Made by a program: the position numbers and the translations under genes. 64,000 bases of DNA from Lytechinus pictus (taxonomy: Eukaryota). The notes under the pieces are model-generated. The model made no database searches. It was not told the origin of the DNA and was given only the letters and a program-made list of their open reading frames with translations. The stretch covers positions 24,242,001-24,306,000 of the forward strand of contig NC_087256.1 of assembly GCF_037042905.1 (NCBI RefSeq), read 5' to 3'. Numbering within the stretch: the first letter of the stretch is position 1; each line of letters starts with the position of its first letter. Below are positions 11,371 to 50,130 of this stretch, piece after piece.

Positions 11371-14300
11371 TCATTTCGTGTTGATCCTAGATTGAACTCT
11401 CAATAGGACAGCTGTGGTGGTCAAGATCACCAAAACAACAAAAAGAAGAACACCATTAACCATGAAGACTTTGGTGTAGGACTGGGTTAGGTCGAACAGA
11501 GATCCTGTTGGAGGAGGGGATAAAAAAAAATGCTATTCGATAAATACCATCGTTGCAAGTTGAGTTTATCATCCTTTACTACTAGTATTTCATATCACAT
11601 ACCATATATACTGTCGAAGGAACGTAGTACATAATTGATTAAAATCATGTATTTTGAGTTTTTAATGTATTTTAGAATTTAATGCATACTATTCTTTAGA
11701 TTTGCTAATCGTATCATGAGTTGAGACCCTTAGTCCCCCGAGGGTTGAAACGGAGGGTCGTATTTTCGAATCGAAATGCATATACCTGCCAGAAATTCAT
11801 TCCTCGAAATGCATGTGCGCTGTAGAAGACTTGCCGGGACTAATTCTATGGTAATAATCGCATAGAGACGTTAGATAATAACGTGATAATAATGCCTTTT
11901 TACGAGAACTGAACATTATCATTATAACTATTGTAATAGCATAATTATGAAAATTATCATCACAGTCACTTAAATGTAACTGGCATGACAGTAAATTTAT
12001 TCAATACCGGGAGTCCTTTGTTAATCTATATAATTATAACGTTAAAATGAAAATAAGTATTTAAATACAAGTACCTGTCATATAGCCTGCTGAGGTAGCT
12101 CCTAATCCAGTAAAGAAAAATAGCATTGCATAAGCTCGTCTGAATTTGACTGGGTCAAATGTAATCTTCTTTACCACGGCAGAGGGCATAGTATCTTCAG
12201 TAAAGAAACAGATGCCTTGGACGAACGCCAAACCAGCCCGTACAGGATACCCTGATCCGACGAAGTCAAGGAGAAAAGTCAGGATGCAGACAATACTGAC
12301 GGGGATGTATATCAGAAAAGGATCGACGTTTTTAGAAATGAGAATAATGAATACTGTTCTTCCTAAGATACCACCAATTCCTGCTAGAGTGGATAATAAT
12401 ACCGCATGGGAACTGATAATCCCAAGGGATTCGGCATGGGGTACCAAGAACAGCATCCAACCGTACAATGCATATGAGAAGAGGAAAATCGACGGCATGT
12501 TAAACAAGACCAGCCAGTCATGAAACGTAAGACCTCTGCAACAGAACTTGTACCAAGGTTCGGTATTGCCCTTCGATGTCCCTGCAGACGCCCCAGCCAG
12601 TTTGTCGTCGTCGTCTTCTTCTTCGGTGATCAATGGTAAGTGTTCGGTTAACACAGCAGTTTCGACGTCATCAAGCCCAATCTCTGAATGATCAGATCCT
12701 GTACTGCTTGACTGATGTTCCTTATGATTTTTTTCACCCCTTGATCCCGGAGCGCTGTTATTTTTCGGTCGTGTAAGCTCACTTGTCATCTCGCTATCTG
12801 TTCGGACCAGTCCCATTGTCTTAGCTTCAGGACAATTAATTTTAATTTTCTTCATGATTGGTTTACGGATTACAGCAGCACACACCATGGCGTGAAGACC
12901 AATACCGGCTAAGATCAGAAAACTTCCGTGGTACCCGTAAGCCTCTTCCGATCTTTCTACGATGAACGGTATAAAGGTTGCACCTGCAGTCAGACCATAC
13001 AAGGAAAGCGTATTCATCATGACAAAATCATCAGGGAAATAGTCGTTTATGATGAGCGTTGTGGGCAGGTGAATACAGGCAAAACCGGTCCCTAAAAGTA
13101 AAATGAAAATAGAGCGAGATGGGGGAATAGTAAACGATAGGTAAACTAAATAATAATAAAACTTATAATAGTAAAAGTATTTTTTTTTAAATATTTATAA
13201 ACCGCTAAATAAATTAAAAAAACATTTATAAACCGCTAAATAAAATGTTTCTAATCATTGTATTACTACTATTCAGCTTAAGCACGGCTACCCTGATCAG
13301 GCGCTCGAGCATTCAAGTTTTTTTTCCCTACGCGGTACCCATTCACAACACTTGGGTGGAGAGTGGCAAGTGTAGATAAATGACTTGCCAGAAGACGCAA
13401 GTGCTGCAGCGGGGTTTGACCCCCAAGACACTGTGGTTAAATTTCTTATCTACTGAGCAACACCTTTACACGTATGGTATCGGTCCTTAAAAATTAATGA
13501 AGAAAACCAACAAGATTTACAAGTTGCATGAATCCTTCAAATAAAGTGAAATAAACTGATACATCGACCCAGTCTTAACCAGGTACTACTCCAGTATTGA
13601 TCGAATGGGATATATTCATCGATAGACACACAGATATTTAGAACTATGCAAATCTTCAAACAATGATGACAGTGGTTCCAACTCTGCATCAGTTCCTATC
13701 TCGTCTTCCTATCACGTCCTATACTCTGGCCAATCTATACTATTGTATTAGAGTATATTTACCCAGGGAAGCCACTCCAGTTCTGAAAACTGTTCTCCCA
13801 TTGTGACCTGCCATTATTATTACCCCGGCTTTAGCTGGGCTGCCTAGGCGCTCAAGCATTCAAGGAATATCTCCTACCGGGTACCCATTCACCTCACCTG
13901 GATTGAGTCCAGTACAATGTGGATTAATTTCTTGCTGAAGGAAATTACGCCATGGCTGGGATTCGAACCCATGACCCTCTGTTTCAAAGTCAGGAGACTA
14001 GTCCACTGGGCCATAACGCTCCACAAATCTATCATGGACTTCACAAAATACATTAAGCTTTAATATTTTAAGACTCGGTCCCACTGCTCTTACGGATGCA
14101 GAGAGGATTAAAACGGAAAAGAATCTTGCCATCCGTTAGAAAACGGTATGTATCTGTTGTCTACTCTTTGCATACTTGTTTCATACGCTCTATATCCATC
14201 GAGCATCCGTCCACTGTGATTTCATTCATTTCGCCCATTCTCCCCATTGTCTGGAGCGGATGAAAACGGATGGAAATTTTGCTTGTCCGCTGTATCCGTT

Positions 14301-17300
14301 ATGACTACGTTTTGTGTCCATCGGCCAGTGGGACCAAGCCTTTACCAAGATTTCGGAGATCGCCATAAACTCATTTTCTCACTACTTTTTTAGAAATAGA
14401 GACGAGTCTACATGAATAAGGCAACCTTTTCAGTCGATCAGAACAAAGCAGTTCTTCAGAACTTGGGCCCTGTTCTTAAGCTTCGTTTTTAAGCGATTCT
14501 GATTCTGGCCTTGAAATCAGAGGGTAGTGTGTTCTAATCACTGGCGTAAATCCGTGTTGAGGGGTGGGGGGGATGACTGAAATATTTTGGCATTTTTTTT
14601 GCATTCATGTTTTTAGATATGCAAGGAATTGTAATTGATATGTCCACAATGGCGTACCGTGGGTCACGGTATTGTGGGGGCACCAGCAAAATTTTTGAAT
14701 CACTGAGTGAGCGCGCGAAGCGCGCTCAGTTGCTAGTTATTCTGACCTAATAGAGACATTTTAAGGACAATGTCATTGAACGGATATGTATCTCACTGAT
14801 CAAATAATGCGAGCGCGAAGCGCGAGCTGAATTTTTTTATATTCACACCTAAAAAGGGACATTATAATCAAATTTGCGTAATCATGATAGTTACCTGTCT
14901 CGCTAAACAATGCGAGCGCGAAGCGCGAGCTGAAATTTTCGTATAATTTGACCCCAGCAAACAGCGAGATTTTAAGGAATATATTTTAGGAATCCATTAA
15001 GAGTATGCATATCTCACCATAGTCATCTAATGCGAGTGCCAAGCGCTTGCTGATTTTATTAGAATTACATCTGAACACATGAAACACTTTTTGTAGTCAT
15101 TGCAATCATGATTATCATACGCACCTCACTAATCAAATATTGCGAGCGTGAAGCGTGAGCAGAAAATTTAGATAAGTTAGATAATTCAGACCTGAAGTGG
15201 GGCATTCTAAGGTTTCTTTGTAGGAATTAACTTGGACCATACGTATTTCATTAACCAAATGATGCGAGTGCGAAGCGCGAGCTGAAAATTTTTGATATTC
15301 AGATCAGAAAAAGGGACATTTTAAGGACTGATTTTAGGAATTCATGAAGAGCAGACATATCTCACCAATCCACTAATGCGAACGTAATCACAGACAGGAA
15401 ATGTTTTTATATATACGAAGACCTTAACATGGGGCAATCACTTTTTGAGTTATGTAAAAGAAGCATATGCCTATGTCACTACATAAAACAATGATAACTC
15501 AAGTGCTAGGAAATATATTTGGTTTATATTGACTTGAAAACGGGATGTTTTAGTACAACAGGATTATATATCTCGTTGAACAGACAATGCGAGCACCAGG
15601 AACAATGAAGACGTAGGCCCTGGGCAAATTATGTTTCATAAAGTTATGATAAAAATGTTTCTTATGTAATGTAACATAACATAATTATAATATGATATAA
15701 CATTATAATGAATAATACTTTCTTTTTTCCCACTACGTTTCTTTTCCTTTCTCCCTCTTTTCTCTTTTTCCCCATTTCCCCGGGGTTTTTTTTGTCAGCC
15801 GATGGGGGGAGCATGTGCCTCCCATGCCCCCCCCCCCCCCCCGTAGTTACGCCACTGTATGTCCATATGGCAAATACCCCTCCAATAGTATTATCTTTTA
15901 CCCCATGATGGTTTAATGATTTTATTAGAGATTACATTCAAAAAATTTTGACATTCAATCTTAATCCCTTCCCAAAGACCCCAACATCGATGAATTGGAA
16001 GAAACGGGGGTTTCTCTTCAATGTTATAATAAGGACATAAGTATTTCGTTTGGAAATGGTGAACTGGCTCTTTATTTGCATTTTATGATTCAATAATATT
16101 GTTTTATTTGTTAAGCGGTATTTTAGGAAGAATTTTCACCAATAAAACAATTATCTCTTGTGATTTTTTTAAATTTCTTTCGTAAAAAGTGGGGGGGATG
16201 ATTGTACAGGCCATCCCCCCCTCCTCGAAAAGTGGGGGGGATATATCCCCCCCATCCCCCCCGGGATTTACGCCAGTGGTTCTAATCCCAACGCTGCCGC
16301 ACGTCCTTTGGCAAAGAACGAATCCAACATTTGCCATTCTACACCCAGGTGTTAAATGGGTACCCGGTAGGATTCAAAAGCCCATGTTGTAAGCCCAGGC
16401 CAAGCACTAGCAACTGAGTCTTAAAACTCGTGTTGGAATGATTACAGGGAGTGGGAAAAGTGCTTTTTCTGCGAGCATGCTCGGATTCAAAGACCCGGTA
16501 ATATATCTAAAGTGCTTAGAGACGTTGATCCGATGTATTAAGCGATATATTAAAAAAAACAGCATTATCATAATGACTTACGATCTTGGTCATTACAATC
16601 GTTAAATCATGTTTGCTGTACATTAGTGTATATATATATATATTATTTTGTCAAGTGCATCGTGTGTGAATATTGAGTGATCATAATGATATAGTTTCAT
16701 ACTTTTCATCCAATCAACATAAAACTGATCCATGATAGTTAATGAGATCAATGGTTACGCTGTATTATATTTTTGACGATGGTGATAATGAAATGGTTTA
16801 AATATATTCATCGCCTGTAATCTCCCTTACCTGTTAATGCAAGACACACGCCCACAACTACAACATTAGTTGAAAAGGCACATATGAGCATGCAAGTCGA
16901 GCCGAGTATTGCTCCTCCTCCGGCGACCAGTCGGTCGTTCACCCTTTCTAGTATTAGAGATACAAGTGGACCTGCCAAAATAAATAAATAAACTTGTTCT
17001 TATTCTTCAAGAGGACGAATTAGGTGGTCTGTCATCATTTTTCATTCGGTGTCGGTTGATGTATGAAATGACTTATTTAGATAATTATTATTTACTTGAT
17101 AATCTTGGTCATAGACATCATGGGAATCAATTTTGACCATGTTAAACGTGATTATTACAATTGTGATGATAATCGTGATGATTATCATGACAGGAAGATA
17201 GGATTTATGAAATGAAGTTTGAGGCACATAATATACTTTGATGAATTCTTCCAAAAGTTCAGACTATTTTACCCAAATTGGCTCGCTCAAAATTGCAAAA

Positions 17301-21818: not shown

Positions 21819-24800
21819 TCATTTCGTGTTGATCCTAGATTGAACTCTCAATAGGACAGCTGTGGTGGTCAAGATCACCAAAACAACAAAAAGAAGAACA
21901 CCATTAACCATGAAGACTTTGGTGTAGGACTGGGTTAGGTCGAACAGAGATCCTGTTGGAGGAGGGGATAAAAAAAAATGCTATTCGATAAATACCATCG
22001 TTGCAAGTTGAGTTTATCATCCTTTACTACTAGTATTTCATATCACATACCATATATACTGTCGAAGGAACGTAGTACATAATTGATTAAAATCATGTAT
22101 TTTTAGTTTTTAATGTATTTTAGAATTTAATGCATAATATTCTTTAGATTTGCTAATCGTATCATGAGTTGAGACCCTTAGTCCCCCGAGGGTTGAAACG
22201 GAGGGTCGTATTTTCGAATCGAAATGCATACCTGCCAGAAATTCATTCCTCGAAATGCATGTGCGCTGTAGAAGACTTGCCGGGACTAATTCTATGGTAA
22301 TAATCGCATAGAGACGTTAGATAATAACGTGATAATAATGCCTTTTTACGAGAACTGAACATTATCATTATAACTATTGTAATAGCATAATTATGAAAAT
22401 TATCATCACAGTCACTTAAATGTAACTGGCATGACAGTAAATTTATTCAATACCGGGAGTCCTTTGTTAATCTATATAATTATAACGTTAAAATGAAAAT
22501 AAGTATATAAATACAAGTACCTGTCATATAGCCTGCTGAGGTAGCTCCTAATCCAGTAAAGAAAAATAGCATTGCATAAGCTCGTCTGAATTTGACTGGG
22601 TCAAATGTAATCTTCTTTACCACGGCAGAGGGCATAGTATCTTCAGTAAAGAAACAGATGCCTTGGACGAACGCCAAACCAGCCCGTACAGGATACCCTG
22701 ATCCGACGAAGTCAAGGAGAAAAGTCAGGATGCAGACAATACTGACGGGGATGTATATCAGAAAAGGATCGACGTTTTTAGAAATGAGAATAATGAATAC
22801 TGTTCTTCCTAAGATACCACCAATTCCTGCTAGAGTGGATAATATTACCGCATGGGAACTGATAATCCCAAGGGATTCGGCATGGGGTACCAAGAACAGC
22901 ATCCAACCGTACAATGCATATGAGAAGAGGAAAATCGACGGCATGTTAAACAAGACCAGCCAGTCATGAAACGTAAGACCTCTGCAACAGAACTTGTACC
23001 AAGGTTCGGTATTGCCCTTCGATGTCCCTGCAGACGCCCCAGCCAGTTTGTCGTCGTCGTCTTCTTCTTCGGTGATCAATGGTAAGTGTTCGGTTAACAC
23101 AGCAGTTTCGACGTCATCAAGCCCAATCTCTGAATGATCAGATCCTGTACTGCTTGACTGATGTTCCTTATGATTTTTTTCACCCCTTGATCCCAGAGCG
23201 CTGTTATTTTTCGGTCGTGTAAGCTTACTTGTCATCTCGCTATCTGTTCGGACCAGTCCCATTGTCTTAGCTTCAGGACAATTAATTTTAATTTTCTTCA
23301 TGATTGGTTTACGGATTACAGCAGCACACACCATGGCGTGAAGACCAATACCGGCTAAGATCAGAAAACTTCCGTGGTACCCGTAAGCCTCTTCCGATCT
23401 TTCTACGATGAACGGTATAAAGGTTGCACCTGCAGTCAGACCATACAAGGAAAGCGTATTCATCATGACAAAATCATCAGGGAAATAGTCGTTTATGATA
23501 AGCGTTGTGGGCAGGTGAATACAGGCAAAACCGGTCCCTAAAAGTAAAATGAAAATAGAGCGAGATGGGGGAATAGTAAACGATAGGTAAACTAAATAAT
23601 AATAAAACTTATAATAGTAAAAGTATTTAAAAAAAAAACATTTATAAACCGCTAAATAAATTAAAAAAACATTTATAAACCGCTAAATAAAATGTTTTTA
23701 ATCATTGTATTACTACTATTCAGCTTAAGCACGGCTACCCTGATCAGGCGCTCGAGCATTCAAGTTTTTTTCCCTACGCGGTACCCATTCACAACACTTG
23801 GGTGGAGAGTGGCAAGTGTAGATAAATGACTTGCCAGAAGACGCAAGTGCTGCAGCGGGGTTTGACCCCCAAGACACTGTGGTTAAATTTCTTATCTACT
23901 GAGCAACACCTTTACACGTATGGTATCGGTCCTTAAAAATTAATGAAGAAAACCAACAAGATTTACAAGTTGCATGAATCCTTCAAATAAAGTGAAATAA
24001 ACTGATACATCGACCCAGCCTTTACGTCTTAACCAGGTACTATTCCAGTATTGATCGAATGGGATATATTCATCGATAGACACACAGATATTTAGAACTA
24101 TGCAAATCTTCAAACAATGATGACAGTGGTTCCAACTCTGCATCAGTTCCTATCTCGTCTTCCTATCACGTCCTATACTCTGGCCAATCTATACTATTGT
24201 AAGTATATTTACCCAGGGAAGCCACTCCAGTTCTGAAAACTGTTCCCCCAGTGGGACCTGCCATTATTATTACCCCGGCTTTAGCTGGGCTGCCTATAGG
24301 CGCTCAAGCATTCAAGGAATATCTTCCTACCGGGTACCCATTCACCTCACCTGGATTGAGTGCAGTACAATGTGGATTAATTTCTTGCTGAAGGAAATTA
24401 CGCCATGGCTGGGATTCGAACCCATGACCCTCTGTTTCAAAGTCAGGAGACTAGTCTACTGGGCCATAACGCTCCACAAATCTATCATGGACTTCACAAA
24501 ATACCTTAAGCTTTAATATTTTAAGACCCGGTCCCACTGCTCTTACGGATGCAGAGAGGATTAAAACGGAAAAGAATCTTGCCATCCGTTGGAAAACGGT
24601 ATGTATCTGTTGTCTACTCTTTGCATACTTGTTTCATACGCTCTATATTCATCGAGCACCCGTCCACTGTGATTTTATTCATTTCGCCCATTCTGTCCAT
24701 TGTCTGGAGCGGATGAAAACGGATGGAAATTTTGCTTGTCCGCTGTATCCGTTATGAATACGTTTTGTGTCCATCGGCCAGTGGGACCAAGCCTTTACCA

Positions 24801-35877: not shown

Positions 35878-38600
35878 CATGGTGTCGATCGGTATTCTTG
35901 ATTGGGGGGGATGATTGACACAAATATTCTTGTGGATGGGGATCTTATAATATTACCCCCACTAAAATCACAAGTTAGGACATTTAGGAGTGGTTGATAT
36001 GCATGGTGTTCTTGGAAATCCCTTCATTGTTGCAGTGTATTGTATTTAAATAATTTTTTTTTAATTCAATTTGTGTTATACAAGTAAGCCCAGTGGCGTA
36101 CCGTGGGTCATGGCATCGGGGGGCACCAGCAAAAAATTTGAGTCTGTGAGCACGCGAAGCGCGCTCAGTTGCCAGGTATACTGACCTAATAGACACATTT
36201 TAAGGACAGTGCCATATATTAAACAGATATGTATCTCACTGATGAAATAATGCGAGCGCGAAGCGCGAGCTTAAAATTTTTGATATTCGGACGTAAAAAG
36301 GGACATTATAATCAACTTTTTGTAATCATGATACGTACCTATCTCGCTAAACAGTGTGAGCGCGAAGCGCGAGCTGAAATTTTTGTATATATTGACCCCA
36401 AACAGGGAGATTTAAGGACTATATTTAAGGAATCCACTACATATCTCACCACAGTCATCTAATGCGAGTGCTAAGCGCTTGCTGATTTTGTTGAAATTAC
36501 ACATGAAGCACTTGAAGTCATTGTAATCATGATTATTAACATACGCATCGCAATAATCAAGTATTGCGAGCGCGAAGCGCGAGTTGAAAATTTAGGAAAT
36601 TCAGACCTGAAAAGGGGCATTCTAAAGTTTGTTTGTAGGAATTCATTAAGACCATACGTATTTCATTAACCAAATGATGCGAGCGCGAAGCGCGACCTGA
36701 AAAGTTTTGATATTGAGATCAGAAAAAGGGGCATTTTAAGGACTGATTATAGGAATTCATGGAGAGCAGACATATCTCACTAATGCGAACATAAGCACGG
36801 ACAAGAAATGTTTTATATTAAGACCTTAAAATGTGGCAATCACTTTAAGTAGTCATGAAAAGAAGCATACTATTGCACATAAAATAATAATTCGAAGTGC
36901 GAGGAAGTATATTGAAAACAGGAGGTTTTAGTACCACAGGATTATATATCTCGTCAAAATTAAACAGACAATGTGAGCACCAGGAACAATGAAGACATGG
37001 ACCCTAATCAAATTATGTTTCATAAAGTTATGGAAAAAAATGCGTCTTATGTAATATAACAGAATTATAGTATAATATAACATCATAATGAACAATAATT
37101 TCTTCTTTCCCATTACATTTCCCTTCCTCTCTCCCTCTTTTTCTCCTTTTCCTCGTTTTTTTTTTGTCAGCCGATTGGGTGCATGGGCATGTGCCCCCCA
37201 TGCCCCCCCCCCGTAGTTACCCCACTGAGTGAGCCTATTCTAAACTCATACGAAAGAAAAAATGACAAAAATTGTCTGGACCATGTACAAAGTGATCTGT
37301 TTATTGAGCATGATGTATACAACTTCTCTCTTAAATCTAACCCGACTGGCAATATCTTTTTTCTTCTTAATGCATGATGATAAAATGCAGATTCGGACAA
37401 ATTAAGACTAACACAAATTACAAACTGTGTGGCTTCTCGTGCGCCATCGGGCTTACCGTCATTCCTTAGACAATTTTAACCCTGGATTTTAACACGTTTT
37501 AAATGTTTTATAAGTGCATGAAACAAAAACAAACATAAAAACAATCAAAACTCAACTGTCATCTTATGATATTTCTCCAACATCTTCTTGACTCATCAGT
37601 GTGTAATATCAGTTAATATATGTGTTAAAATGAAATTAACATACCGCATGAGTGTGCTCATATAGAATGCAAAACTGTCATCCCTTTCCAAACTCAAAAA
37701 AAGATTTCTTTTTGCCAAAATAAGAAAAAATCAACCAAGTTTGGTTATTCAAGTCCATGACAATAACAAGAATAACATGGCAAAAAACCCCTCCGATGTT
37801 CATATTCGAAGATACGCTTTAGAGAGAAATGAATGATTATTCTTTCTGAGACCATAAATTGATTTCACTTATTAAAAAATTGTAAAAATATGATCATATT
37901 ATATTGAGCTCACTGAACCTCAATATTTTCATGAGAGGTATCTGATGGGGTCACATGATAAAATGTTTAATATTCAAAAGGGTTGTAGATTAAATGGGAC
38001 AAACATCATGCACTTGGATGTGGGGAGGGGTAAATCTGAGAAAAGTTGTTTGTATTTTTTCAAGATCTACCCCTCTAGGATTTACGTCCATGGAGGTTTC
38101 CCTGTTTATCTTGCCACCCTTTTCCACCCGTTTATTTTTCCACCCTTTTGAATTAATTGATTTGTTTAAATCAATTTATTCACCACTGGTGGGATGGAAC
38201 ACCCTATCAACAAAAGTTTTTTTTCGTCGGGGTCCTTTTATGTCATGTGTTTAAAAAATATCATATACCGGTACATAAACATTTCATTCATTTTCATCTT
38301 GAACCTGCACCCATCTGTTTAAAAGTCCTGGAAAAGAATGTTTTTATTTAATAACAATATACACAAATTGCGAGGGAAACAAACTGATTGATGGCATACT
38401 ATAATCATCACTATAATCATCATTATCAAACTTTTCATTTTTTCATCATCATTATTACAATTTTTCTACCCTGAATTATTTGGGGGGGGGGGGATGATAA
38501 TACAGGCCATCCCCCCCCCACTTGAAATATTGGGGGGTATATCCCCCACCCCCCCCACCCCCCCCCCACCCCCCCCCCCCCCCCGTGATCGACACCCATG
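35878..38600. mobile_element. Non-autonomous hAT-type element (outer)
   Basis: TIR CATGG(G)TGTCGATC; perfect 8-bp TSD CCGTCGGG (35870-35877, 38601-38608); subterminal sequence resembles 14539-16278. Confidence 0.85.
36091..37227 (+). mobile_element. CAGTGGCGTA-family hAT-type element, nested in 35878-38600
   Basis: Homologous to 14647-15857; TSD AGTAAGCC/AGTGAGCC. Confidence 0.88.
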
Positions 38601-39661: not shown

Positions 39662-40847
39662 CAGTGGCGTAACTACGGGGGGGGCATGGGGGGGCACGTG
39701 CCCCCCCCCCCCCCCCCAATCGGCTGGCCAAAAAAAAAAAAAAAAAAAAAAAACGGAGAAAAGGAGGGAGAAAGGGAAAGAAACGTAGTGGGGAAAGAAG
39801 AAATTATTGTTAATTATAATGTTATATTATATTATAATTATGTTATGTTATATTACATTAAAAAATCATAACTTTATGAAACATAATTTGCGCAGGGCCT
39901 ATGTTTTCATTGTTCCTGGTGCTCGCATTGTCTGTTTAACAAGATTATGTAATCCTCTGTACTAAAATCTCCCGTTTTCAAGTCAATATACACCAAATAT
40001 ATTTCCTCGCACTTCGAATAATTATTGTTTAATGTAGTGCAATATGCTTCTTTTTCATGACTACTTAAAGCGATTGCCCCTTTTTAAGGTCTTAATATAA
40101 ACCATTTCCTGTCCGTGCTTACGTTCGCTTTCGTGGATTGGTGAGATATGTCTGTTCTTCATGAATTCCTAAAATCAGTCCTTAAAATGTCCCTTTTTCT
40201 GATCTGAATATCAAAAATTTTCAGCTTGCGCTTTGCGCTCGCATCATTTGGTTAGTGAAATACGCATGGTCATCGTGAATTCCTACAAGCAGGCCTTAGA
40301 ATGCCCCTCTTTAAGTCTGAATTTCCTAAATTTTCAGCTCGCGCTTCGCGCTCGCAACATTTGATTAGTGAGATGCGTATGATAATCATGATTACAATGA
40401 CTACCAGTGCTTCATGTGTTTAGATTTATATTATTCTTACAAAATCAGCAAGCTCTTGGCACTCGCATTAGATGACTATGGTGAGATATGTATACTGGAT
40501 TCCTAAAATATAGTCCTTAAGATGTCCCTGTTTGGGGTCAATATATACAAAAATTTCAGCTCGCGCTTCGCGCTCGCATTGTTTGTTTATCGAGACAGGT
40601 ATGTATTATGATTGCAAAAATTTGCTTATAATGTCCTTTTTTAGGTCTGAATATCAAAAAAAATTTGCTCGCGCTTCGCGCTCGCATTATGTGATCAGTG
40701 AGATACATAACCGTTTAATGGCACTGTCCTTAAAATGTATCTATTATGTCAGTATACCTGGCAACTGAGCGCGCTTCGCACGCTCTCTAAGTGACTCTAA
40801 ATTTTTGCTGGTGCCCCCCCAATGCTGTGACCCACGGTACGCCACTG
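39662..40847 (-). mobile_element. CAGTGGCGTA-family hAT-type element, reverse orientation
   Basis: TIRs present; perfect TSD GATGTGTC (39654-39661, 40848-40855). Confidence 0.9.
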
Positions 40848-41162
40848 GATGTGTCTACATAGGTCACATGTTAGCCTCATATTATTACGCAATAAACGTA
40901 GTCCTGATTAATTATATTTCAGGAAGTACGAAGAACCATACATTTTTCACGTTCCCATGCCTACTCATATTTTTGCTTATTACACCTTAGGGCTCCTATA
41001 GTCACTGATCTTGGCCCCGTAACTAAAGCTATTCATTGCATTGTTGAATTGAACTTTAGCTTGATTGCATTCATCATTATGAGCAATCAAGCGAACACGT
41101 CAACAATGCGATCACTCCCGGCGCTTTGTGTTAACGGACGATTTGATGACGTCACATGTTTC

Positions 41163-43167
41163 TTTGAATAAATGAATCTTTATTTCGTTTCAATTCCGAT
41201 ATCAAACAACAATAATAACAACAGTAAATTATTGGGATACAAGTAAATAGCAAAGAACAAAAGTAAATAATCACAGGATAATATACATAATACATGCACT
41301 ACTTTTTATGGAACATAAACACCCATGAGAAGAGATGGAAATGAAACGTGGTGACCTACTAAGAAGCTTAGCTTGTGGGCCATAGGCCACCAGCATGTTA
41401 AAAACTTACATTAGCAATCATTTTAAAACATCATAGAACAAGTAAACAAAAAATTGGAGTAAATAACCAAAGTACAGATATACATATTTACAAAAGATAC
41501 ACTAAAAAGTAACAAAAAGGTGAAATGCAGAATGCAAGCATTCTATTACACCTAAAGTATAAGAATCTGAAATTCGAAAAGAAGAAAGAAAAGAGGAAAA
41601 ATAAAGAAAATAGGCAGAGCTCTATTTTTGCATAGATAATTGTGGGAAGAATACAATTTATAAAGTTAGACGAGATATAACAAGCAGGCATTTGTTTACT
41701 GATTTAAGTATTTCTTCAGTAAATCGGTCTTTAACTTGTTTCTAAAAACACTAAGGCTAACTGATTGCTTCAATGAAGAAGGAAGGGAGTTCCATAATTT
41801 TGGCCCTGTATAAACAAATGTATTTAGCCGAAAACTAGTTTTGACCAATGGCAAGTGGAGAAAAGAAACTTGTCTTGTATAGTAAGAATGGATTTGGTCA
41901 TTTCTAACACATAGTGAATCAAGGGCAAGTGGAAGTTCTCTTTTATTTAATTGATACATAATGCAACCAAGGTTGAGATCAAATATATCATGTAAATTAA
42001 GGAACTTGTTTTCATAAAACAAAATATTAGTGTGAGATCGTGAATTTACTCCACATACTAGTCTAAGTACCCTTTTCTGGACTTTAAATAACCCATCTAA
42101 ATGAACTTTAGCAGCGTTACCCCAGGCAAGGAATATACTCTTCAATGAATTAATGACTCCTGAATTTCTGGAAAGAAGTTTACATAAATAGGATATGTGA
42201 ACTTTCCAGTTCAGCTTACTATCAATGTGTACCCCAAGGAATTTTGTACTCAAGACTTCAGTAATCTGAACATCACTGATTGTAATATTATCTGGCAATG
42301 TTGCTAGGGTGTTGCTGAATAACATGTAGTTTGTTTTAACAAGATTTAAGGAAAGCCTGTTAGCAATGATCCATTCGTTAACAGAAATCAATTCTGAATT
42401 GATAGTTTGCAATAAATTGCAGGGGTTCTTTTCAGAAAAAAAATATGCTTGAGTCATCTGCAAACAGGATAAATGAAAGGATTTTTGATGACTGAGGGAA
42501 ATCATTAATATATATGAGAAATAAGATAGGTCCAAGGAGTGAACCTTGTGGCACTCCACATGTAATTGACTGCATGGGAGACTTAACACCATTTAAAAAT
42601 ACAAACTGTTTTCTATCAGAGAGGTAGCTCTTGAACCACTCCAAAGCCTTACCCCGGAATCCATAGAGAGATAGTTTTATTATAAAAAAGGATGTCATGG
42701 TCAATCGTGTCGAAGGCTTTGGAGTAGTCTAGAAATATACCGACAGTATGTGGCCCATTATCTCTTGCGGAAGAAATTTTGTCGATAAAATGTAACAGAG
42801 CATGAGAGGTTGTATGTTTTTTCACGAAAACCAAATTGTTCAGGATATATTATATTATTAATTTTCAAAAATTTCATAACACGAACAGAAATTATCTTTT
42901 CAAGAATTTTAGATTAACATGTAAGAAGAGAGATGGGCCGGTAATTTCCAACTTCCTGAGGGTTTCCCTTTTTGTAAATCGGCACAACTTTGGCTATTTT
43001 CATACTCAAAGGAACGATTCCATGTACAATAGATAAATTGAATATATGAGTAATAGGAGAAACAATAACATCAATAACTTCTTTAATAAGCTTATTAGAT
43101 AGGCCATCATACCCAGCAGCCTTATTTGTTTTCAAATTATGAACAATGTCAATCACTTCTTTTTCAA
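41163..43167 (-). mobile_element. 5'-truncated, decayed LINE (CR1/L2-group ORF2 reverse transcriptase pseudogene) with 3' UTR
   Basis: Frameshifted fragments: [72 protein letters not shown] (plus TTTATT 41179-41184) near the 3' end, with ATTC-like tail. Confidence 0.9.
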
Positions 43168-46100
43168 CGTGGTGATCCTCGAATGCGTTCTCAATAAGAC
43201 AACGGTGATGATCAGGATCACCAAAGAAACAAAGTGAAAAACACCAATGACCATGAAGACCTTAGTGAAGGACTGAGTTAGGTCGAACAGATATCCTGAT
43301 AGAGGAAGAGAAAAAGATTTAAAAAAAAAAACAATGAAATTCGATAAATACCATCGGTACAAGTTGAATCAATCATCTTCTACCACCAATCGATCACGTG
43401 TTTGACATCACATACCATAAAACACTGCTGAAGAAACGTAGTACGTTATTGATCGAAATCATTTAATAGAATTAAATGCATAATTTTGTATAGATTTGCA
43501 AATCGTATCATGAGTTGAGACCCCTAGTCTACCGAGGGTTGATACGAAGGTTCATGGATTCGAATCCCAGCCACAGCATTATTTCCTTCAGCAAGCAATC
43601 GATCCACATTGTGCTTAACCCAACAGCACAAAATGGATACCTGGCAGGAATTCATTCCTTGAAATGGATGTGCGCTGTAGAAGACTTTCCAGGCTAACTC
43701 CAGGGTAACATAAAGTCCTTTGTAAGCGCATAGAGACGTTAGATGAAAACGGGAGATGCTTTTCTACAAGAATGAACATTATCATTACAATAACTGTACT
43801 AGAATATTGATGGAAATTATCATCGTCACTCAAATGTCATTGAGATGACATTTAGTCAATCCCGGGAGTCCTTTGTGAATGTATAACGTTAAAATCGAAA
43901 TTAAGTATATAAATACAAGTACCTGTCATGTAACCTGCTGAGGTTGCTCCTAATCCAGTAAAGAAAAATAGCATTGCAGAAGCTCGCCTGAATTTGACTG
44001 GGTCTAATGAAGTCTTCTTTACCATGGCAAAGGGCATAGTGTCTTCAGTAAAGAAACAGATGCCTTGGACGAACGCCAAACCAGCCCGTACAGGATACCC
44101 TGATCCGACGAAGTCGAGGAGAAAAGTCAGGGTGCAGACAATACTGACGGGAATGTATATCAGGAAAGGATCGACGTTTTTAAAAATGAGAATAATGAAT
44201 ACTGTTCTTCCTAAGATACCACCAATACCTGCCAAAGAAGATAAAAATACCGCATGTGAGCTGATAATTCCAAGGGATTCGGCATGGGGTACCAAGAACA
44301 GCATCCAACTGTACAATGCATATGAGAATAGGTAAAACGACGGCATGTTCAACAAGACCAGCCAGTCATGAAACGTAAGACCTCTGCAACAGAACGTATA
44401 CCAAGGTTCGGTATTGCCCTTCGATGTCCCTGCAGACGTCCCTGCCAGCTTGTCGTCGTCGTCTTCTTCGGTGATCAGTGGTAAGTGTTCAGTGGTCACA
44501 GCAGCATCAACGTCATCAAGCCAAATCTCTGAATGATCAGATCCTGCACTGCTTGACTGATGTTCCTGAGAAGGAATATCTTCACCCCTTGATCCCAGAG
44601 CGCTGTTATTTTTCGGTCGTATAAGCTTACTTGTCATCTCGCTATCTGTTCGGACCAGTCCCATTGTATTAGCTTCAGGACAATGACTTTTAATTTTCGT
44701 CATGATTGGTTTACGGATTATTGCAGCACACACCATGACGTGAAAACCAATACCGGCTAAGATCAGAAAACTTCCGTGGTACCCGTAAGCCTCTTCCGAT
44801 CTTTCTACGATGAACGGTATGAAGGTTGCACCTGCAGTCAGACCATACAAGGAAAGCGTGTTCATCATAACAAAGTTATCAGGGAAATAGTCATTTATGA
44901 TGAGCGCTGCGGGCAGGTAAATACAGGCAAAACCGGTCCCTAAAAATAAAATGGTGATAGAGAGAGGGGGATAGTAAACGACAGGTAAACTAAATAATAA
45001 TAATAACATGTAATATTTGTGTACCACTAAATAGAATGATTTTAATTCCTGCATTACTCCTACTTTTACCTCGGCTTCAGCACGGCTACCCTGATCGCGC
45101 GCTCGAGCATTCAAGATTATTTTTCCTACGCGGTCACAACACTTGGGTGGAAAGTGGCAAAGTGTAGATAAATGACTTGCCAGAAAACTGCCGGGGGTTA
45201 CATTTCTGAGAATTATCTAATGAGCAACACCTTTACATGTAGGCCTATAGCATCAGGTTTTATAAAAGAATGAAGAACAAACAGCTTGAATGAATTATTC
45301 AAATAAAGTGAAATTGATACACTAGAAATGAACTAGCCCTTACATCTTAACCAGGTACTATTCCACTATTGATCGAATGGCATATCTTAGACGATAGACA
45401 CACAGATATTTCGAACTATCTTGATCTTGAAAGTGTGAACAATGATTCAAACTCTACATCAGTTCATATCTCGTCGTCCTATTGTCTCCTATACTCTCGC
45501 CAATCTATCGACATGGACTTCAAAAAAATCCTTGATATCTAGTATTTCACCAAGAACTCGGAGATCGCCATGGAATAATTTCCTCACTACTTGTTTATTT
45601 GCCGGCCAGATGGAACCGGACAGGATGATTCTTCCTGCAAGGGTCAAAACTGTGGTGTCCATCAGGGACCAAAATAGGCCCTCTTCATTTTCGCCCTCTT
45701 AACGATTTACGAGGATCAAGTGAGCTTTACTTTGAAATAGAGACGGGTCTGCATAAGGCAACCTTCTCCCTCAATCAATCGAAACAAACAAACCAGTTCG
45801 AACTCGTTTATAATAACATCTTTAACGCGCTTCCTATTTTTATGTCGTCCCGATGTAATAAGCGCTACATAAAAGCGGAATATCATTATCATAAGGAATT
45901 GTCACTTTAATTTTGTAATATCATGTTATCTGTACACTAGAACAATAAGTTCAGTGGTCACGTTTTGATATGTTGCTTTTTTAATGATGATAGTAAAATA
46001 TTGTTAAAAATATATTCATCGCTCGTGATCTCCCTTACCTGTTAATGCAAGACCCACGCCCACAACTACAGTATTAGTTGAAAAGGCACATATGAGTAGG

Positions 46101-48793
46101 CAAGTCACGCTGAGTATTGCTCCTCCCCCGGCGACTAGTCGATCGTTCATCCTTTCCAGTATTAGAGATACTATTGGACCTGTCAAACAAAGGGAAATCG
46201 TTACACCATGATTTCGATCAGAATTTCATAACAGTTATAATCAACACTTCAATTTGAAATCTCCTGAACGTGCATGACATTATTGCAATCAATCATTCGA
46301 TGATGAATATTATATATATTAGCCAGAAACAGTTATGATATTAAGGCTATGAAATACATAATGTGTGTTTTGGACACGTAATTTTTTCGTCTGCTTATAT
46401 TTTATTTATTCGTTAATCGTTATATAAATCCTCTTCCCAAACATGGAATGGGCTGAACACTTCGGGATATAATATTTGTCAGTTTAAATTGCCCATTTCA
46501 AAGATTTATTTTCTTTTTAATTTTTTTAAAACCAGTATAAAAGAATCGACGCTTGAGAAAAAAAATGACGCCCACTTCAATTTTGAACATTGAAATTTTG
46601 ATGTCATAATTATACTAAAGTAAGATTTACATTAATACCGAAGCTGGCTTGTGATTGTGTAACGTCATTTCGTCATCTCTGTCACGTCCGTGCTCAATGA
46701 CCAGCCCTGAATCCAAACCTAGCACCTTTCCACTCAAAATTTGAACGCAACTCGATTGTCATGATGTATGATTTTGTTGTGGCAGGGATCAAGGGGGAAT
46801 GGGGTCAAGCAGTGGCGTACCGTGGGTCACGGCATTGGGGGGCACCAGCAAAAATTTCGAGGCACTTAGGGAGCGCGCGAAGCGCGCTCAGTTGCCAGGT
46901 ATACTGACCTAATAAAGATATTTTAAGGACATGCAGTGCCATTAATCGGATATGTATCTCACTGGTTAAATAATGCGAGCGCAAAGCGCGAGCTGAAAAT
47001 TTTTGATATTCAGATCTAAAAAGGGACATTATAAGCAAATTTGTTTGTAATCATGATACGTAACTGTCTCGCTAAACAAACAATGCGAGCGCAAAGCGCG
47101 AGCTGAAATTTTTGTATATATTGACCCTAAAAAAAATTTAAGGACTATATTTTAGGAATCCATTAAAAGTATAAATATCTCACCATAGTCATCTAACACA
47201 TAAGCACTTTTGTAGTCATTGTAATCATAATTATCATACGAACCTCACTAATCAAATACTGCGAGCGCGAAGCGCGAGCTGAAAATTTAGGAAATTCAGA
47301 CCCGAAGAGGGGCATTCTAAGGCTTGTTTGTAGGAATTCACTAAGACCCTACGTCTTTCACTAAGCAAATGATGCGAGCGCGAGCGAGAGCTGAACATTT
47401 TTTATAAGATCAGAAAAATTGACAATTTAACGACTGATTTTAAGAATTCATGAAGAGCAGACATCTCACCAATCCACTAATGCGAACGTTAGCACGGACA
47501 GGAAATGTTTTATATTAAGACCTTAAAATAGGGCAATCACTTTTAGTAGTCATGAAAAAGAAGCATATGTCACTACATAAAACAATTATAACTCGAATTG
47601 CGAGGAAATATATTTGGTGTATATTGATTTGAACACGGGAGGTTTTAGTACAACAGGATTATATATCTCGTTAAACAGTCTATGCGAGCATTAGGAACAA
47701 TGAAGACACAATGAAGCAAATAATGTTTCATAAAGTTATGAAAGAAATGCTTCTTATGTAATATAACATAACATAATATAATATAACGTTAGAATGAACG
47801 ATAATTTCTTCTTTCCCCACTACTTTTCTCTTCCTTTCTTCCATTTTTTCTCTTTTTCCCCGATTTTTTTTTTTTGGCCAGCCGATTGGGGGGCACGTGC
47901 CCCCCCCCCCATGCCCCCCATGTCCCACCCCCCCCCCCCGTAGTTACGCCACTGGGGTCAAGGGACCTTGCTCTCTGTTGTGGTGGTCCTTGACTTCTTT
48001 ATTGTTTTGGCAGAAAAAAATCAAAGCTGTGCATGCTCTCCCTCCCCCCCCCCCTCGACATGCTCGATAAATCCTGGATCCTCACTTGCCACTATGTTTT
48101 TGTGTTTGTGTGTGTGTGTGTGATTTTAGATCGGGGAGTGGTAGGGGGGTACCCGCGTTAACCCACCTTCTAAAAATATCCTAAACAGGTACGCTTTGCA
48201 TTTAAATATTTTAGAACATTAACAGCGATTTGGCACCTTTGATCAAATTTCTCACCAAAAATTGGCAAATTATCGACAGTCGGCGAAAATGTCTCTACTT
48301 TATAGATTTTTTTAAATCCATGATATTATATTGAAACCCGTTGATTACATGAATATCAGAGCTACAACAGAAAATAATTTCCAATTAACGGGTTAGGTTG
48401 GGGTGCACACTTTATGTTGCACACGGGAGGAAAGGGTAATACATGTATTCAAATTGCACATGGGCGAAATCAACGTCAATATTATCATTCTGGTAAAAAA
48501 AATGTGAATACCTGAACAAATACAGGAACTTGCATATTGGTATTTTAGTGTGGGGCTCATCGTCATTCAAACATGAAAACCTACTTACTTGCGAGGTATG
48601 TGAGGGTGGATGGTAGGCTGCAGATGAACCCAACAATGGTGAAGCTTGAGTTTAATTTCACCACCATCTCATTGAGAAGAACACCAAACGATTTCGCGAT
48701 GCCTCCAACAATGATCAGAATAACAAATTTACAAAATACGAGAACGTACCCCCGCCGCCAATTCAAAATAATTCCTTCCGATGGCGGCTTCAT
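43153..48793 (-). CDS. SLC16/MCT-like transporter, diverged paralogue, copy 4 (exons 48793-48589, 46179-46039, 44939-43923, 43295-43153)
   Basis: Homologous exons with conserved splice sites and many substitutions (e.g. FCKFVILIIVGGIAKSFGV). C-terminus RITTLKKK* runs into LINE sequence. Confidence 0.87.
46810..47954 (+). mobile_element. CAGTGGCGTA-family hAT-type element in intron 1 of copy 4
   Basis: TIRs present; perfect TSD GGGTCAAG (46802-46809, 47955-47962). Confidence 0.9.
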
Positions 48794-49098: not shown

Positions 49099-50130
49099 CA
49101 TCGATTGATATTATCCAAAGGACATTTCAATAGACTATTCAATGGACCATTTAATAGACTTCAATTGACTTTAAACAGGTAGCATGGCCGTGGTCAGCTG
49201 GGGTGCTGGGGTACTGAAGCATCCCCGAGATTTGCCAGAGAGTGCTATTCACCATAAACAGCACCCCCTGGAAATCAAGTAGGCATGCTAAAACGTAGAA
49301 CTTTACCCCCAAGCCCCCCCCCCCTCCCCCCCCCCCCCCCATACATAACAGGTACTTAAAAAACGCTTTACCAAAAATATGATCATAGCGCTTTACAATG
49401 AACAATTAATAATAATGATGAAATTACATCAAACATCACTTAAACATGTAGCTACCGCCCGTAGTCATGTGCTTTTTCACAGCTTTGAAGAGATATTGCT
49501 CCATATGGCGCATCTGCCCATTTTGTACGGCTCATTAGGCCAATGCTGAGACGTTTCCGCCAGCTGCAGTAGGTCCATGGTTGCAGAAACGTCATGGAGA
49601 CTGCATGTTGAGAGAGTCCTGCGATGTCTCTGCAAAGTCTGTGCGAAGTCGCAGAGGCCTCTCAATGCAGAGGAGTCGCATTGATCTGCAGAAGACCAGA
49701 AAGACTGATAAGACTTACTTTAACGCCATATCAGACCAAACCAGAAGTTCCTTTGCCGATGCCTCAGATTCTACAGTCGCGGAGACATCTCCAACGTTTT
49801 GGTTGCTTCAGTCAACAAATGAAACGCCTCTACGAAATCTCAGAGATGGCTCTGTTATGTCTGCGATGTCTCCAGACAAGGGTCAAAGCAGTTTTCCGGA
49901 CAGCCACGGGGATGGTGATACAATGTTTCCAAGTAGCCGTTGCGACGCCTGGAAAACATCCTTGAGACCTCGCCGCAACTAAGAAAAGTCTCACAGTGAC
50001 TACTTGGAGACTTTACTTTACTATTTACCCCGTTTACATGGTTTATAGAGGTGCTGTGGCTCAAATTCCACCGCAGCACTCGCGTCCTTTGGCAAGGCGT
50101 TTACCTACATTGGCCACTCTCCACCCAGGT

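What the first reader, a model, noticed from the sequence alone, without database searches (positions are those of the whole stretch)
41145..43180. LINE inserted exactly at the stop codon of MCT copy 4 now supplies its C-terminus, stop and probably 3' UTR/polyA
Seen: copies 1-3 read GATGACGTCACATGTTTC-ATTT-CGTGTTGATCC across the stop (..RINTK*). In copy 4 these halves lie at 41145-41162 and 43168 onward, separated by a 2-kb sense-oriented LINE. The gene reads ACG TTG AAA AAG AAG TGA (TLKKK*) from LINE bases that read VEKEVIDIVHNL in the RT frame. The LINE AATAAA lies 2 kb downstream. Inference: the gene was rescued by exonisation, gaining a terminal KKK (di-lysine-like) and a TE-derived 3' UTR open to small-RNA regulation.
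Basis: partly seen in the sequence, partly recalled or inferred. Interest (0 to 1): 0.7.

Follow-up and report, generated by a model that had tools for sequence, protein, structure and literature searches.

The report
LINE fragment ends a transporter gene
In the sea urchin Lytechinus pictus a dead 2-kb LINE retrotransposon fragment landed in the last few codons of one of eight tandem monocarboxylate-transporter-like genes and now encodes its last four amino acids and its stop codon, which is a real but ordinary way for a transposon to reshape the end of a gene.

Summary
The genes lie on the minus strand. Copy 4 (four exons, 501 aa, intact) carries a 2,005-bp LINE fragment at 41165-43169. The fragment is 5'-truncated and in the same sense as the gene. 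It lies between the Thr codon ACG and the relic of the old gene end. The reading frame continues into LINE bases as TTG AAA AAG AAG TGA (LKKK*).

The L. variegatus counterpart has an empty, collinear site and ends TTEGNK*. The NCBI proteins for this gene already end in the LINE-coded tail. XP_054765695.2 ends TLKKK. Its older version, about 4% different, ends TLKRK, which matches the base most LINE copies carry. So at least two haplotypes carry the insertion.

"Exactly at the stop codon" is slightly off. The LINE sits 1 to 4 codons before the old stop. It replaced a short tail with a short basic tail, as two of three LINE frames would do.

"Di-lysine-like" fails the canonical motif. One RNA contig shows copy 4 spliced into the terminal exon. 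No read crosses either LINE junction, so the use of LINE sequence as 3' UTR or polyA site remains untested.

This is a new example of a known kind, and of low interest.

The parts
48589..48793 (-). Copy 4 exon A (ATG at 48793; codes for the N-terminus and TM1)
   Evidence: Canonical GT donor. Collinear with exon A of copies 1-3. The NCBI model P0019 instead uses an upstream exon at 49504-49456, spliced to 48702.
46039..46179 (-). Copy 4 exon B
   Evidence: AG/GT borders, in frame.
43923..44939 (-). Copy 4 exon C (1017 nt)
   Evidence: AG/GT borders, open frame. The X20 contig matches it at 98% and is spliced to exon D.
43153..43295 (-). Copy 4 terminal coding exon D. Its last 15 nt are LINE sequence.
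   Evidence: Acceptor AG before 43295. The splice joint 43923|43295 is seen in the X20 contig (skips 627 nt, CT..AC).
43153..43167 (-). LINE-derived codons TTG AAA AAG AAG TGA (LKKK*)
   Evidence: Other family copies read GTTGAAAAGGAAGTGATTGAC here. The proteins P0019 (TLKKK) and P0001 (TLKRK) end here.
43168..43169 (-). 2-nt CG shared by the gene (ACG) and the LINE at the 5' junction (microhomology)
   Evidence: LINE homology runs to 43169. LINE copies read ..TGTCGTTGAAAAGG, and the gene reads ..ACG in all copies and in L. variegatus.
41165..43169 (-). 5'-truncated, degenerate LINE fragment (2,005 bp) starting about 65 aa before the RT domain
   Evidence: 92-99% identity to more than 80 scored copies among 1110 candidates. 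RVT_1 and APE in family ORFs. 16 stops in the RT frame, 1.2% private substitutions and 70 indel columns.
42132..42135 (.). Site of a private 60-bp deletion in this LINE copy
   Evidence: All 11 compared copies carry 60 extra bases here. X20 contigs from other copies break here.
41179..41184 (-). The LINE's own AATAAA, just before its (TTCA)n-type tail
   Evidence: Conserved in all 11 family copies. It lies 1,969 nt after the new stop.
43082..43087 (-). First PAS-like hexamer ATTAAA inside the LINE, 66 nt after the stop, followed by a GT-rich stretch
   Evidence: Sequence scan only. Use is not shown.
41150..41165 (-). Relic of the old gene end, AAAGAAACATGTGACG. It contains the TGA (41154-41152) that is the stop in L. 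variegatus.
   Evidence: Alignment A2: L. variegatus has ACG GAA GGG AAC AAG TGA CGTCAT, and copies 1-3 have ACG AAA TGA AAC ATG TGA CGTCAT.
40850..41149 (-). Ancestral 3' flank of copy 4, collinear with the L. variegatus 3' flank
   Evidence: It includes about 110 nt that copies 1-3 lack. The old AATAAA of copies 1-3 reads AATAAG here.

Best explanation
After the L. pictus and L. variegatus lineages split, an APE-type non-LTR retrotransposon inserted into the terminal coding exon of the single 'copy-4-type' SLC16/MCT-like gene. It belongs to a young, abundant family whose copies end in AATAAAGA(TTCA)n. The insertion is in the sense orientation and directly follows the Thr codon that lies 1-4 codons before the stop.

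Reverse transcription stopped early, leaving a 5'-truncated 2-kb fragment. Its 5' end joined at a CG microhomology, and there is no target-site duplication.

Translation now runs from ACG into LINE bases in a non-RT frame. It reads Leu-Lys-Lys(or Arg)-Lys and stops at a LINE TGA. The short cytosolic tail after TM12 was thus swapped for one of similar length and basic charge, while the transporter core is untouched.

Shown here:
- the insertion and its empty counterpart site;
- the intact ORF;
- presence in two haplotypes;
- splicing of copy 4 into this exon.

Inferred:
- The change is tolerated and nearly neutral rather than adaptive.
- The 3' UTR must start in LINE sequence.
- The transcript probably ends at one of the LINE's internal PAS-like hexamers rather than after the whole element.
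For: - Junctions and frame.
- LINE identity.
- Empty collinear site in L. variegatus, with tail TTEGNK* in three paralogues.
- NCBI proteins of this gene end TLKKK (P0019, identical to the window from GGIAK to the end) and TLKRK (P0001, 16 of 362 aa different). The R matches the AGG of the other LINE copies.
- Only one copy-4-type gene exists in G000, so P0001 is an allele or another assembly and not a paralogue.
- The fragment has 1.2% private substitutions, against a copy-4-specific dS of about 0.036 and a copy 4 to L. variegatus dS of about 0.13-0.17. The insertion is therefore recent.
- Copy-4-lineage changes are 13 non-synonymous and 9 synonymous (omega about 0.46), the same as the other lineages.
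- A spliced copy-4 contig joins 43923|43295 in X20.
- Two of three LINE frames stop within 5 codons.
Against: - No read or contig spans the exon D-LINE junction or the LINE-flank junction. Translation of the LKKK tail and any LINE-derived UTR therefore rest on gene models and logic.
- Copy 4 was not detectable in the two stranded RNA runs. Their exon C reads carry copy-1-3-type letters. Expression is low or restricted.
- The NCBI model drops TM1 by using another first exon, which could mean the gene is decaying.
- There are too few substitutions since the insertion to measure constraint after it.
- The ancestral stop of copy 4 cannot be fixed. One base is missing from the relic, so either the copy-1-3-type stop or the L. 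variegatus-type stop is possible.
Confidence: 0.8

Rival explanations
1. Adaptive exaptation. The LINE-coded KKK tail changes sorting (di-lysine-like). The 2-kb LINE 3' UTR, ending at the LINE's own AATAAA, puts copy 4 under small-RNA control. Together these give one of eight paralogues a new regulation.
For: - The insertion is kept in at least two diverged haplotypes with an open frame.
- The LINE is sense-oriented with a conserved terminal AATAAA.
- The old AATAAA seen in copies 1-3 reads AATAAG in copy 4.
Against: - TLKKK and TLKRK do not fit KKXX or KXKXX (own knowledge of the motif).
- A basic tail is the family norm.
- The K/R difference between alleles argues against a fixed motif.
- Four other PAS-like hexamers lie upstream of the LINE end.
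- No RNA evidence exists for a LINE-long UTR.
- L. variegatus also lacks a canonical AATAAA at the old site, so AATAAG is not evidence of a switch.
Confidence: 0.08
2. Copy 4 is on its way to being a pseudogene. The LINE insertion, low expression and an aberrant 5' exon show a redundant paralogue under relaxed selection. Its open frame is simply not yet broken.
For: - Seven near-identical sister copies provide redundancy.
- No copy-4 reads appear in two RNA runs where the sister copies are seen.
- The NCBI model lacks TM1.
- Allelic protein divergence is 4.4%.
- Omega of 0.4-0.58 is high for a transporter.
Against: - All four exons are open with canonical splice sites.
- The lineage-specific omega (0.46) equals that of the other lineages rather than 1.
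- A spliced transcript exists.
- Both known haplotypes keep the frame.
Confidence: 0.12

Closest known systems
Transposable-element-derived 3' ends of genes (TE-borne polyA sites and terminal coding sequence; Lee, Ji and Tian 2008, PMC2553571)
   Same: A retroelement inside the 3'-terminal exon supplies sequence that the host transcript must use. That paper reports that non-conserved polyA sites are associated with TEs and that many derive from both strands of L1. Here the species-specific LINE supplies the last codons, the stop and at least the start of the 3' UTR.
   Different: Here the TE contribution to the coding part is only four codons plus the stop, in a sea urchin. Use of a TE polyA site is not shown.
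5'-truncated LINE insertions joined by microhomology (L1-type target-primed reverse transcription; own knowledge)
   Same: The element is truncated inside ORF2. There is a 2-nt CG overlap at the 5' junction. The 3' end is intact with the family's tail.
   Different: The tail is a (TTCA)n-type tetranucleotide repeat and not poly(A). No target-site duplication is present, and one base of the target appears to be lost. The LINE clade was not determined.
SLC16 monocarboxylate transporters (MCT1, MCT2, MCT8)
   Same: MFS_1 match at E 1e-19. The best solved-structure matches are MCT2, MCT1 and MCT8. NCBI names the proteins 'monocarboxylate transporter n-like'.
   Different: It is distant from vertebrate MCTs: only the N-terminal half matches, at E 1e-9. 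It belongs to a sea-urchin-specific tandem expansion. Substrate and catalytic residues were not examined.

Membership tests
APE-type non-LTR retrotransposon (LINE) | Reverse transcriptase domain | tested here: met
   Family ORFs match RVT_1 at E 2.4e-36 and 1.8e-36. The window fragment is 96-98% identical to those copies. Its RT frame starts VEKEVIDIVHNL but has 16 stops.
APE-type non-LTR retrotransposon (LINE) | Apurinic-like endonuclease N-terminal to the RT in intact copies | tested here: met
   Exo_endo_phos at residues 65-270 of the 1008-aa ORF in L025. This part is absent from the window fragment because of the 5' truncation.
APE-type non-LTR retrotransposon (LINE) | Common 3' end with variable 5' truncation, in many copies | tested here: met
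   All copies end AATAAAGA(TTCA)n. Copies of different lengths occur among 1110 first-look candidates.
APE-type non-LTR retrotransposon (LINE) | Target-site duplication flanking the insertion | tested here: not met
   The 5' flank ends ..CACCACG and the 3' flank starts AAAGAAAC, so nothing is duplicated. One target base seems lost. Many LINE insertions lack a duplication, so this does not exclude membership.
SLC16 / monocarboxylate transporter family | Major-facilitator fold, with SLC16 members as the nearest characterised relatives | tested here: met
   MFS_1 at E 1.2e-19. The ten best PDB sequence matches are all MCT2, MCT1 or MCT8.
SLC16 / monocarboxylate transporter family | Conserved charged residues of the substrate/proton path, and transport of monocarboxylates | not tested
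   No residue-level alignment to MCT1 was examined, and function cannot be tested here.
TE-derived gene end (exapted terminal coding sequence and 3' UTR) | TE-encoded codons and stop inside the annotated CDS, absent at the counterpart site in a relative | tested here: met
   P0019 and P0001 end in LINE-coded LK(K/R)K. The L. variegatus site is empty.
TE-derived gene end (exapted terminal coding sequence and 3' UTR) | Transcripts that cross the gene-TE junction and are polyadenylated in or after the TE | tested here: inconclusive
   The X20 contig reaches only 39 nt into exon D. No read crosses 43169 or 41165. The stranded runs hold no copy-4 reads.
C-terminal di-lysine ER-retrieval signal (KKXX / KXKXX) | Lys at -3 together with Lys at -4 or -5 from the C-terminus | tested here: not met
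   The tail T(-5) L(-4) K(-3) K(-2) K(-1) has Leu at -4 and Thr at -5. The allele is TLKRK. The motif definition comes from my own knowledge.

The most novel reading that the evidence does not exclude
The LINE-derived tail and LINE-derived 3' UTR give the single copy-4-type paralogue a regulation of its own. This could be small-RNA targeting through the sense LINE sequence, or a changed mRNA end. It would have helped keep this older paralogue distinct beside a seven-copy young expansion, making it a case of TE-driven subfunctionalisation in a sea-urchin transporter cluster.
Probability: 0.06. Interest if true: 0.5.

Novelty: new member of a known kind. Interest (0 to 1): 0.22.

Why it matters
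This is a clean, datable example, with an empty counterpart site in a sister species. It shows a retrotransposon replacing the last codons and the stop of a functional-looking gene without breaking it. It also shows that the annotated NCBI protein ends in transposon-coded residues.

It is useful as an annotation note, and as a marker for studying LINE activity and haplotype history in L. pictus, a laboratory model. It does not open a new question, because transposon-derived gene ends are well documented.

Tried and rejected
- **RNA reads (both caps spent).** I first read the sense-strand exon C coverage in X21 and X22 as copy-4 expression, and the lack of sense reads on the LINE as evidence against a LINE UTR. 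One search showed those reads carry copy-1-3-type residues at all five diagnostic sites. I withdrew that argument: these runs say nothing about copy 4's 3' end.
- **LINE-body reads and contigs.** They come from other family copies. They break at this copy's 60-bp deletion and run on past 43169.
- **Logan transcript fragments ending TLK(K/R)K.** This search found only S. purpuratus relatives.
- **Exact look-ups of P0001 and P0019.** Nothing is on record.
- **Pfam on single exons.** This gave nothing. The full protein was needed.
- **The first LINE copy examined upstream (L024).** It had no endonuclease because it is itself truncated.
- **The protein tree.** It could not fix strict orthology. 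Copy 4 sits at an unresolved base with a zero-length branch, so L. variegatus is used only as an outgroup for the site.
- **Earlier-findings searches by words.** They returned nothing.
- **Consensus of the LINE.** I built none. Only pairwise and private-difference counts were made.
Full report
**Observation.** The gene copies lie on the minus strand. The second half follows 4 nt later in copies 1-3. In copy 4 it lies at 43168-43178 with one mismatch. Read on the minus strand, copies 1-3 end AGG ATC AAC ACG AAA TGA (RINTK*). Copy 4 reads AGG ATC ACC ACG TTG AAA AAG AAG TGA (RITTLKKK*), with its stop at 43155-43153.

**Gene models.** I built four-exon models with canonical GT-AG borders for all four copies in the window.
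- Copy 4 has exons 48793-48589, 46179-46039, 44939-43923 and 43295-43153, giving 501 aa.
- Copies 1-3 give 498 aa.
- All four are open.

The organism is Lytechinus pictus, according to the names on the database proteins.

The proteins match MFS_1 (E 1e-19 to 1e-21). Their best solved-structure matches are MCT2, MCT1 and MCT8. "MCT-like" is therefore fair.

The genome holds eight tandem copies on contig C12. Seven are near-identical copies of the copy-1-3 type, and there is a single copy-4 type.

**The insert is a LINE.** Window 41165-43169 matches a very abundant repeat of this genome. Of 1110 first-look candidates, the 82 scored matches are 92-99% identical.
- Family copies carry an ORF with RVT_1.
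- An intact copy has a 1008-aa ORF with an APE endonuclease at residues 65-270 and the RT at 565-812.
- All copies share a 3' end of AATAAAGA followed by (TTCA)n, not poly(A).
- The window copy starts about 65 aa before the RT domain, so it is 5'-truncated, and it is in the same sense as the gene.
- It is dead: 16 stops in the RT frame, a private 60-bp deletion near 42132, 1.2% private substitutions and 70 indel columns.

**Junctions.**
- At the 5' junction, the CG of the gene's ACG codon is also the LINE's sequence, where other copies read ..TGTCGTTGAAAAGGAAGTGA. This is a 2-nt microhomology.
- At the 3' junction, the LINE tail ..ATTTATTC(A) is followed by AAAGAAACATGTGACGTCATC. Copies 1-3 have AAATGAAACATGTGACGTCATC there.
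- There is no target-site duplication, and one base of the target is missing.

**Empty site and ancestral tail.** An L. variegatus gene (P0003, locus L023) is collinear with copy 4 on both sides and has no LINE. It reads ..ATC ACC ACG GAA GGG AAC AAG TGA CGTCATGAAACCGTCCGTTAACACAAAGC... The three L. variegatus paralogues end TTEGNK or TTEGNN.

The TGA used there survives in copy 4 at 41154-41152, 12 nt beyond the insertion point. Copies 1-3 use an earlier TGA.

Because one base is missing from the relic in copy 4, I cannot tell which stop copy 4 used before the insertion. In either case the LINE lies directly after the Thr codon, 1 or 4 codons before the stop, and not in the stop. If the L. 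variegatus-type stop applied, four residues were replaced by four.

**Independent support that the insertion is real and shared.** NCBI protein XP_054765695.2 (P0019) is identical to my copy-4 model from GGIAK to the final TLKKK. Its earlier version, XP_054765695.1 (P0001), differs at 16 of 362 residues and ends TLKRK.

AGG (Arg) is what the other LINE copies carry at that codon. The window's AAG is therefore a later change on this haplotype.

G000 has only one copy-4-type gene. P0001 is thus another haplotype or assembly of the same gene, and it carries the same LINE.

**Age and constraint.**
- Private divergence of the fragment is 1.2%.
- Copy-4-specific synonymous divergence is about 0.036, from 9 synonymous changes over 248 sites.
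- dS between copy 4 and the L. variegatus gene is 0.13-0.17.

The insertion is therefore recent, and this fits its absence from L. variegatus.

Copy-4-lineage changes are 13 non-synonymous and 9 synonymous (omega about 0.46). The other two lineages give much the same. This gives no sign of pseudogene-like drift. However, there are too few changes since the insertion to judge constraint after it.

The protein tree leaves copy 4 at an unresolved base. I therefore treat L. variegatus only as an outgroup for the site.

**RNA.** I had one run search and one read-laying run.
- A 560-nt contig of run X20 matches copy 4 at 98%. It is window-type at four of the diagnostic sites.
- That contig joins 43923 to 43295, skipping 627 nt with CT..AC ends. 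Copy 4 is therefore transcribed and spliced into exon D. The contig stops 39 nt into exon D.
- In the stranded runs X21 and X22, the exon C reads are gene-sense. All of them carry copy-1-3-type letters at the diagnostic sites, so they come from the sister copies.
- Copy 4 was not detectable in about 6% of those runs.
- Reads on the LINE body come from other family copies.
- No read or contig crosses either LINE junction.

The 3' UTR and polyA claim is therefore untested.

By logic, any mRNA that ends in exon D must begin its 3' UTR in LINE sequence. PAS-like hexamers lie 66, 472, 1202, 1206 and 1969 nt after the stop. The first (ATTAAA, 43087-43082) is followed by a GT-rich stretch. An early end inside the LINE is therefore at least as likely as the LINE-end AATAAA.

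**The "rescue" and "di-lysine" readings.** Of the three frames entering the fragment, one stops after 1 codon and one after 4 (the frame used). Only the RT frame stays open, for about 80 codons. A short tail was therefore the likely outcome.

The tail TLKKK has Leu at -4 and Thr at -5. It does not fit KKXX or KXKXX (motif definition from my own knowledge). The other haplotype has TLKRK.

Related sea-urchin family members end KRRR or KRKR right after the last helix. A short basic tail is the family norm.

**Comparison with what is known.** Transposable elements supplying polyA sites and reshaping the 3' ends of genes is documented (PMC2553571). This case is a clean new instance in a sea urchin, with the coding contribution limited to four codons and the stop.

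**Verdict.**
- Novelty is that of a new member of a known kind.
- Interest is low.

Noticed in passing
window 41118-43141 (LINE body): In the two stranded RNA runs X21 and X22, all of roughly 60 reads laid on the LINE have the first mate on the minus strand. That means the RNA is antisense to the LINE, and no reads are sense. They come from other family copies. Why the family's RNA is strictly antisense there is unexplained.
   Followed up: partly
window 49456-49504 and 48702 (minus strand): NCBI protein XP_054765695.2 starts from an alternative upstream exon (MEQYLFKAVKKHMTT). That exon is spliced to an internal acceptor in exon A, which drops the first transmembrane helix. Copies 1-3 are annotated from the MKPPTEG start.
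   Followed up: partly
window copies 1-3 (exon C/D: 2306-3322, 12075-13091, 22521-23537 and terminal exons): The three near-identical copies differ from one another only by non-synonymous changes in 354 compared codons (dN 0.004-0.005, dS 0). The numbers are small, but the pattern is odd for very young duplicates.
   Followed up: no
G000:C12:24207982-24286868: The tandem array has eight genes, of which the window holds four. Seven are of the copy-1-3 type, and the single copy-4 type is at one end.
   Followed up: partly
window 43540-43700 (intron between exons C and D): This is a SINE-like repeat with a tRNA-like GGTTC..GAATCC box. A 36-nt core (43631-43666) has very high RNA depth on both strands in all runs, with loose ends on both sides. 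ARAGORN finds no tRNA.
   Followed up: partly
window 39662-40848, 36090-37227, 14647-15857, 46810-47919: Another dispersed repeat of about 1.2 kb occurs in both orientations and abuts the 3' flank of copy 4 at 40848. It forms an inverted pair (36090-37227 against 40848-39662).
   Followed up: no
L023:15605-21424 and protein P0004: L. variegatus also has a tandem array. The model P0004 reads through TTEGNN into the next copy's exon A sequence, which is probably a merged annotation.
   Followed up: no
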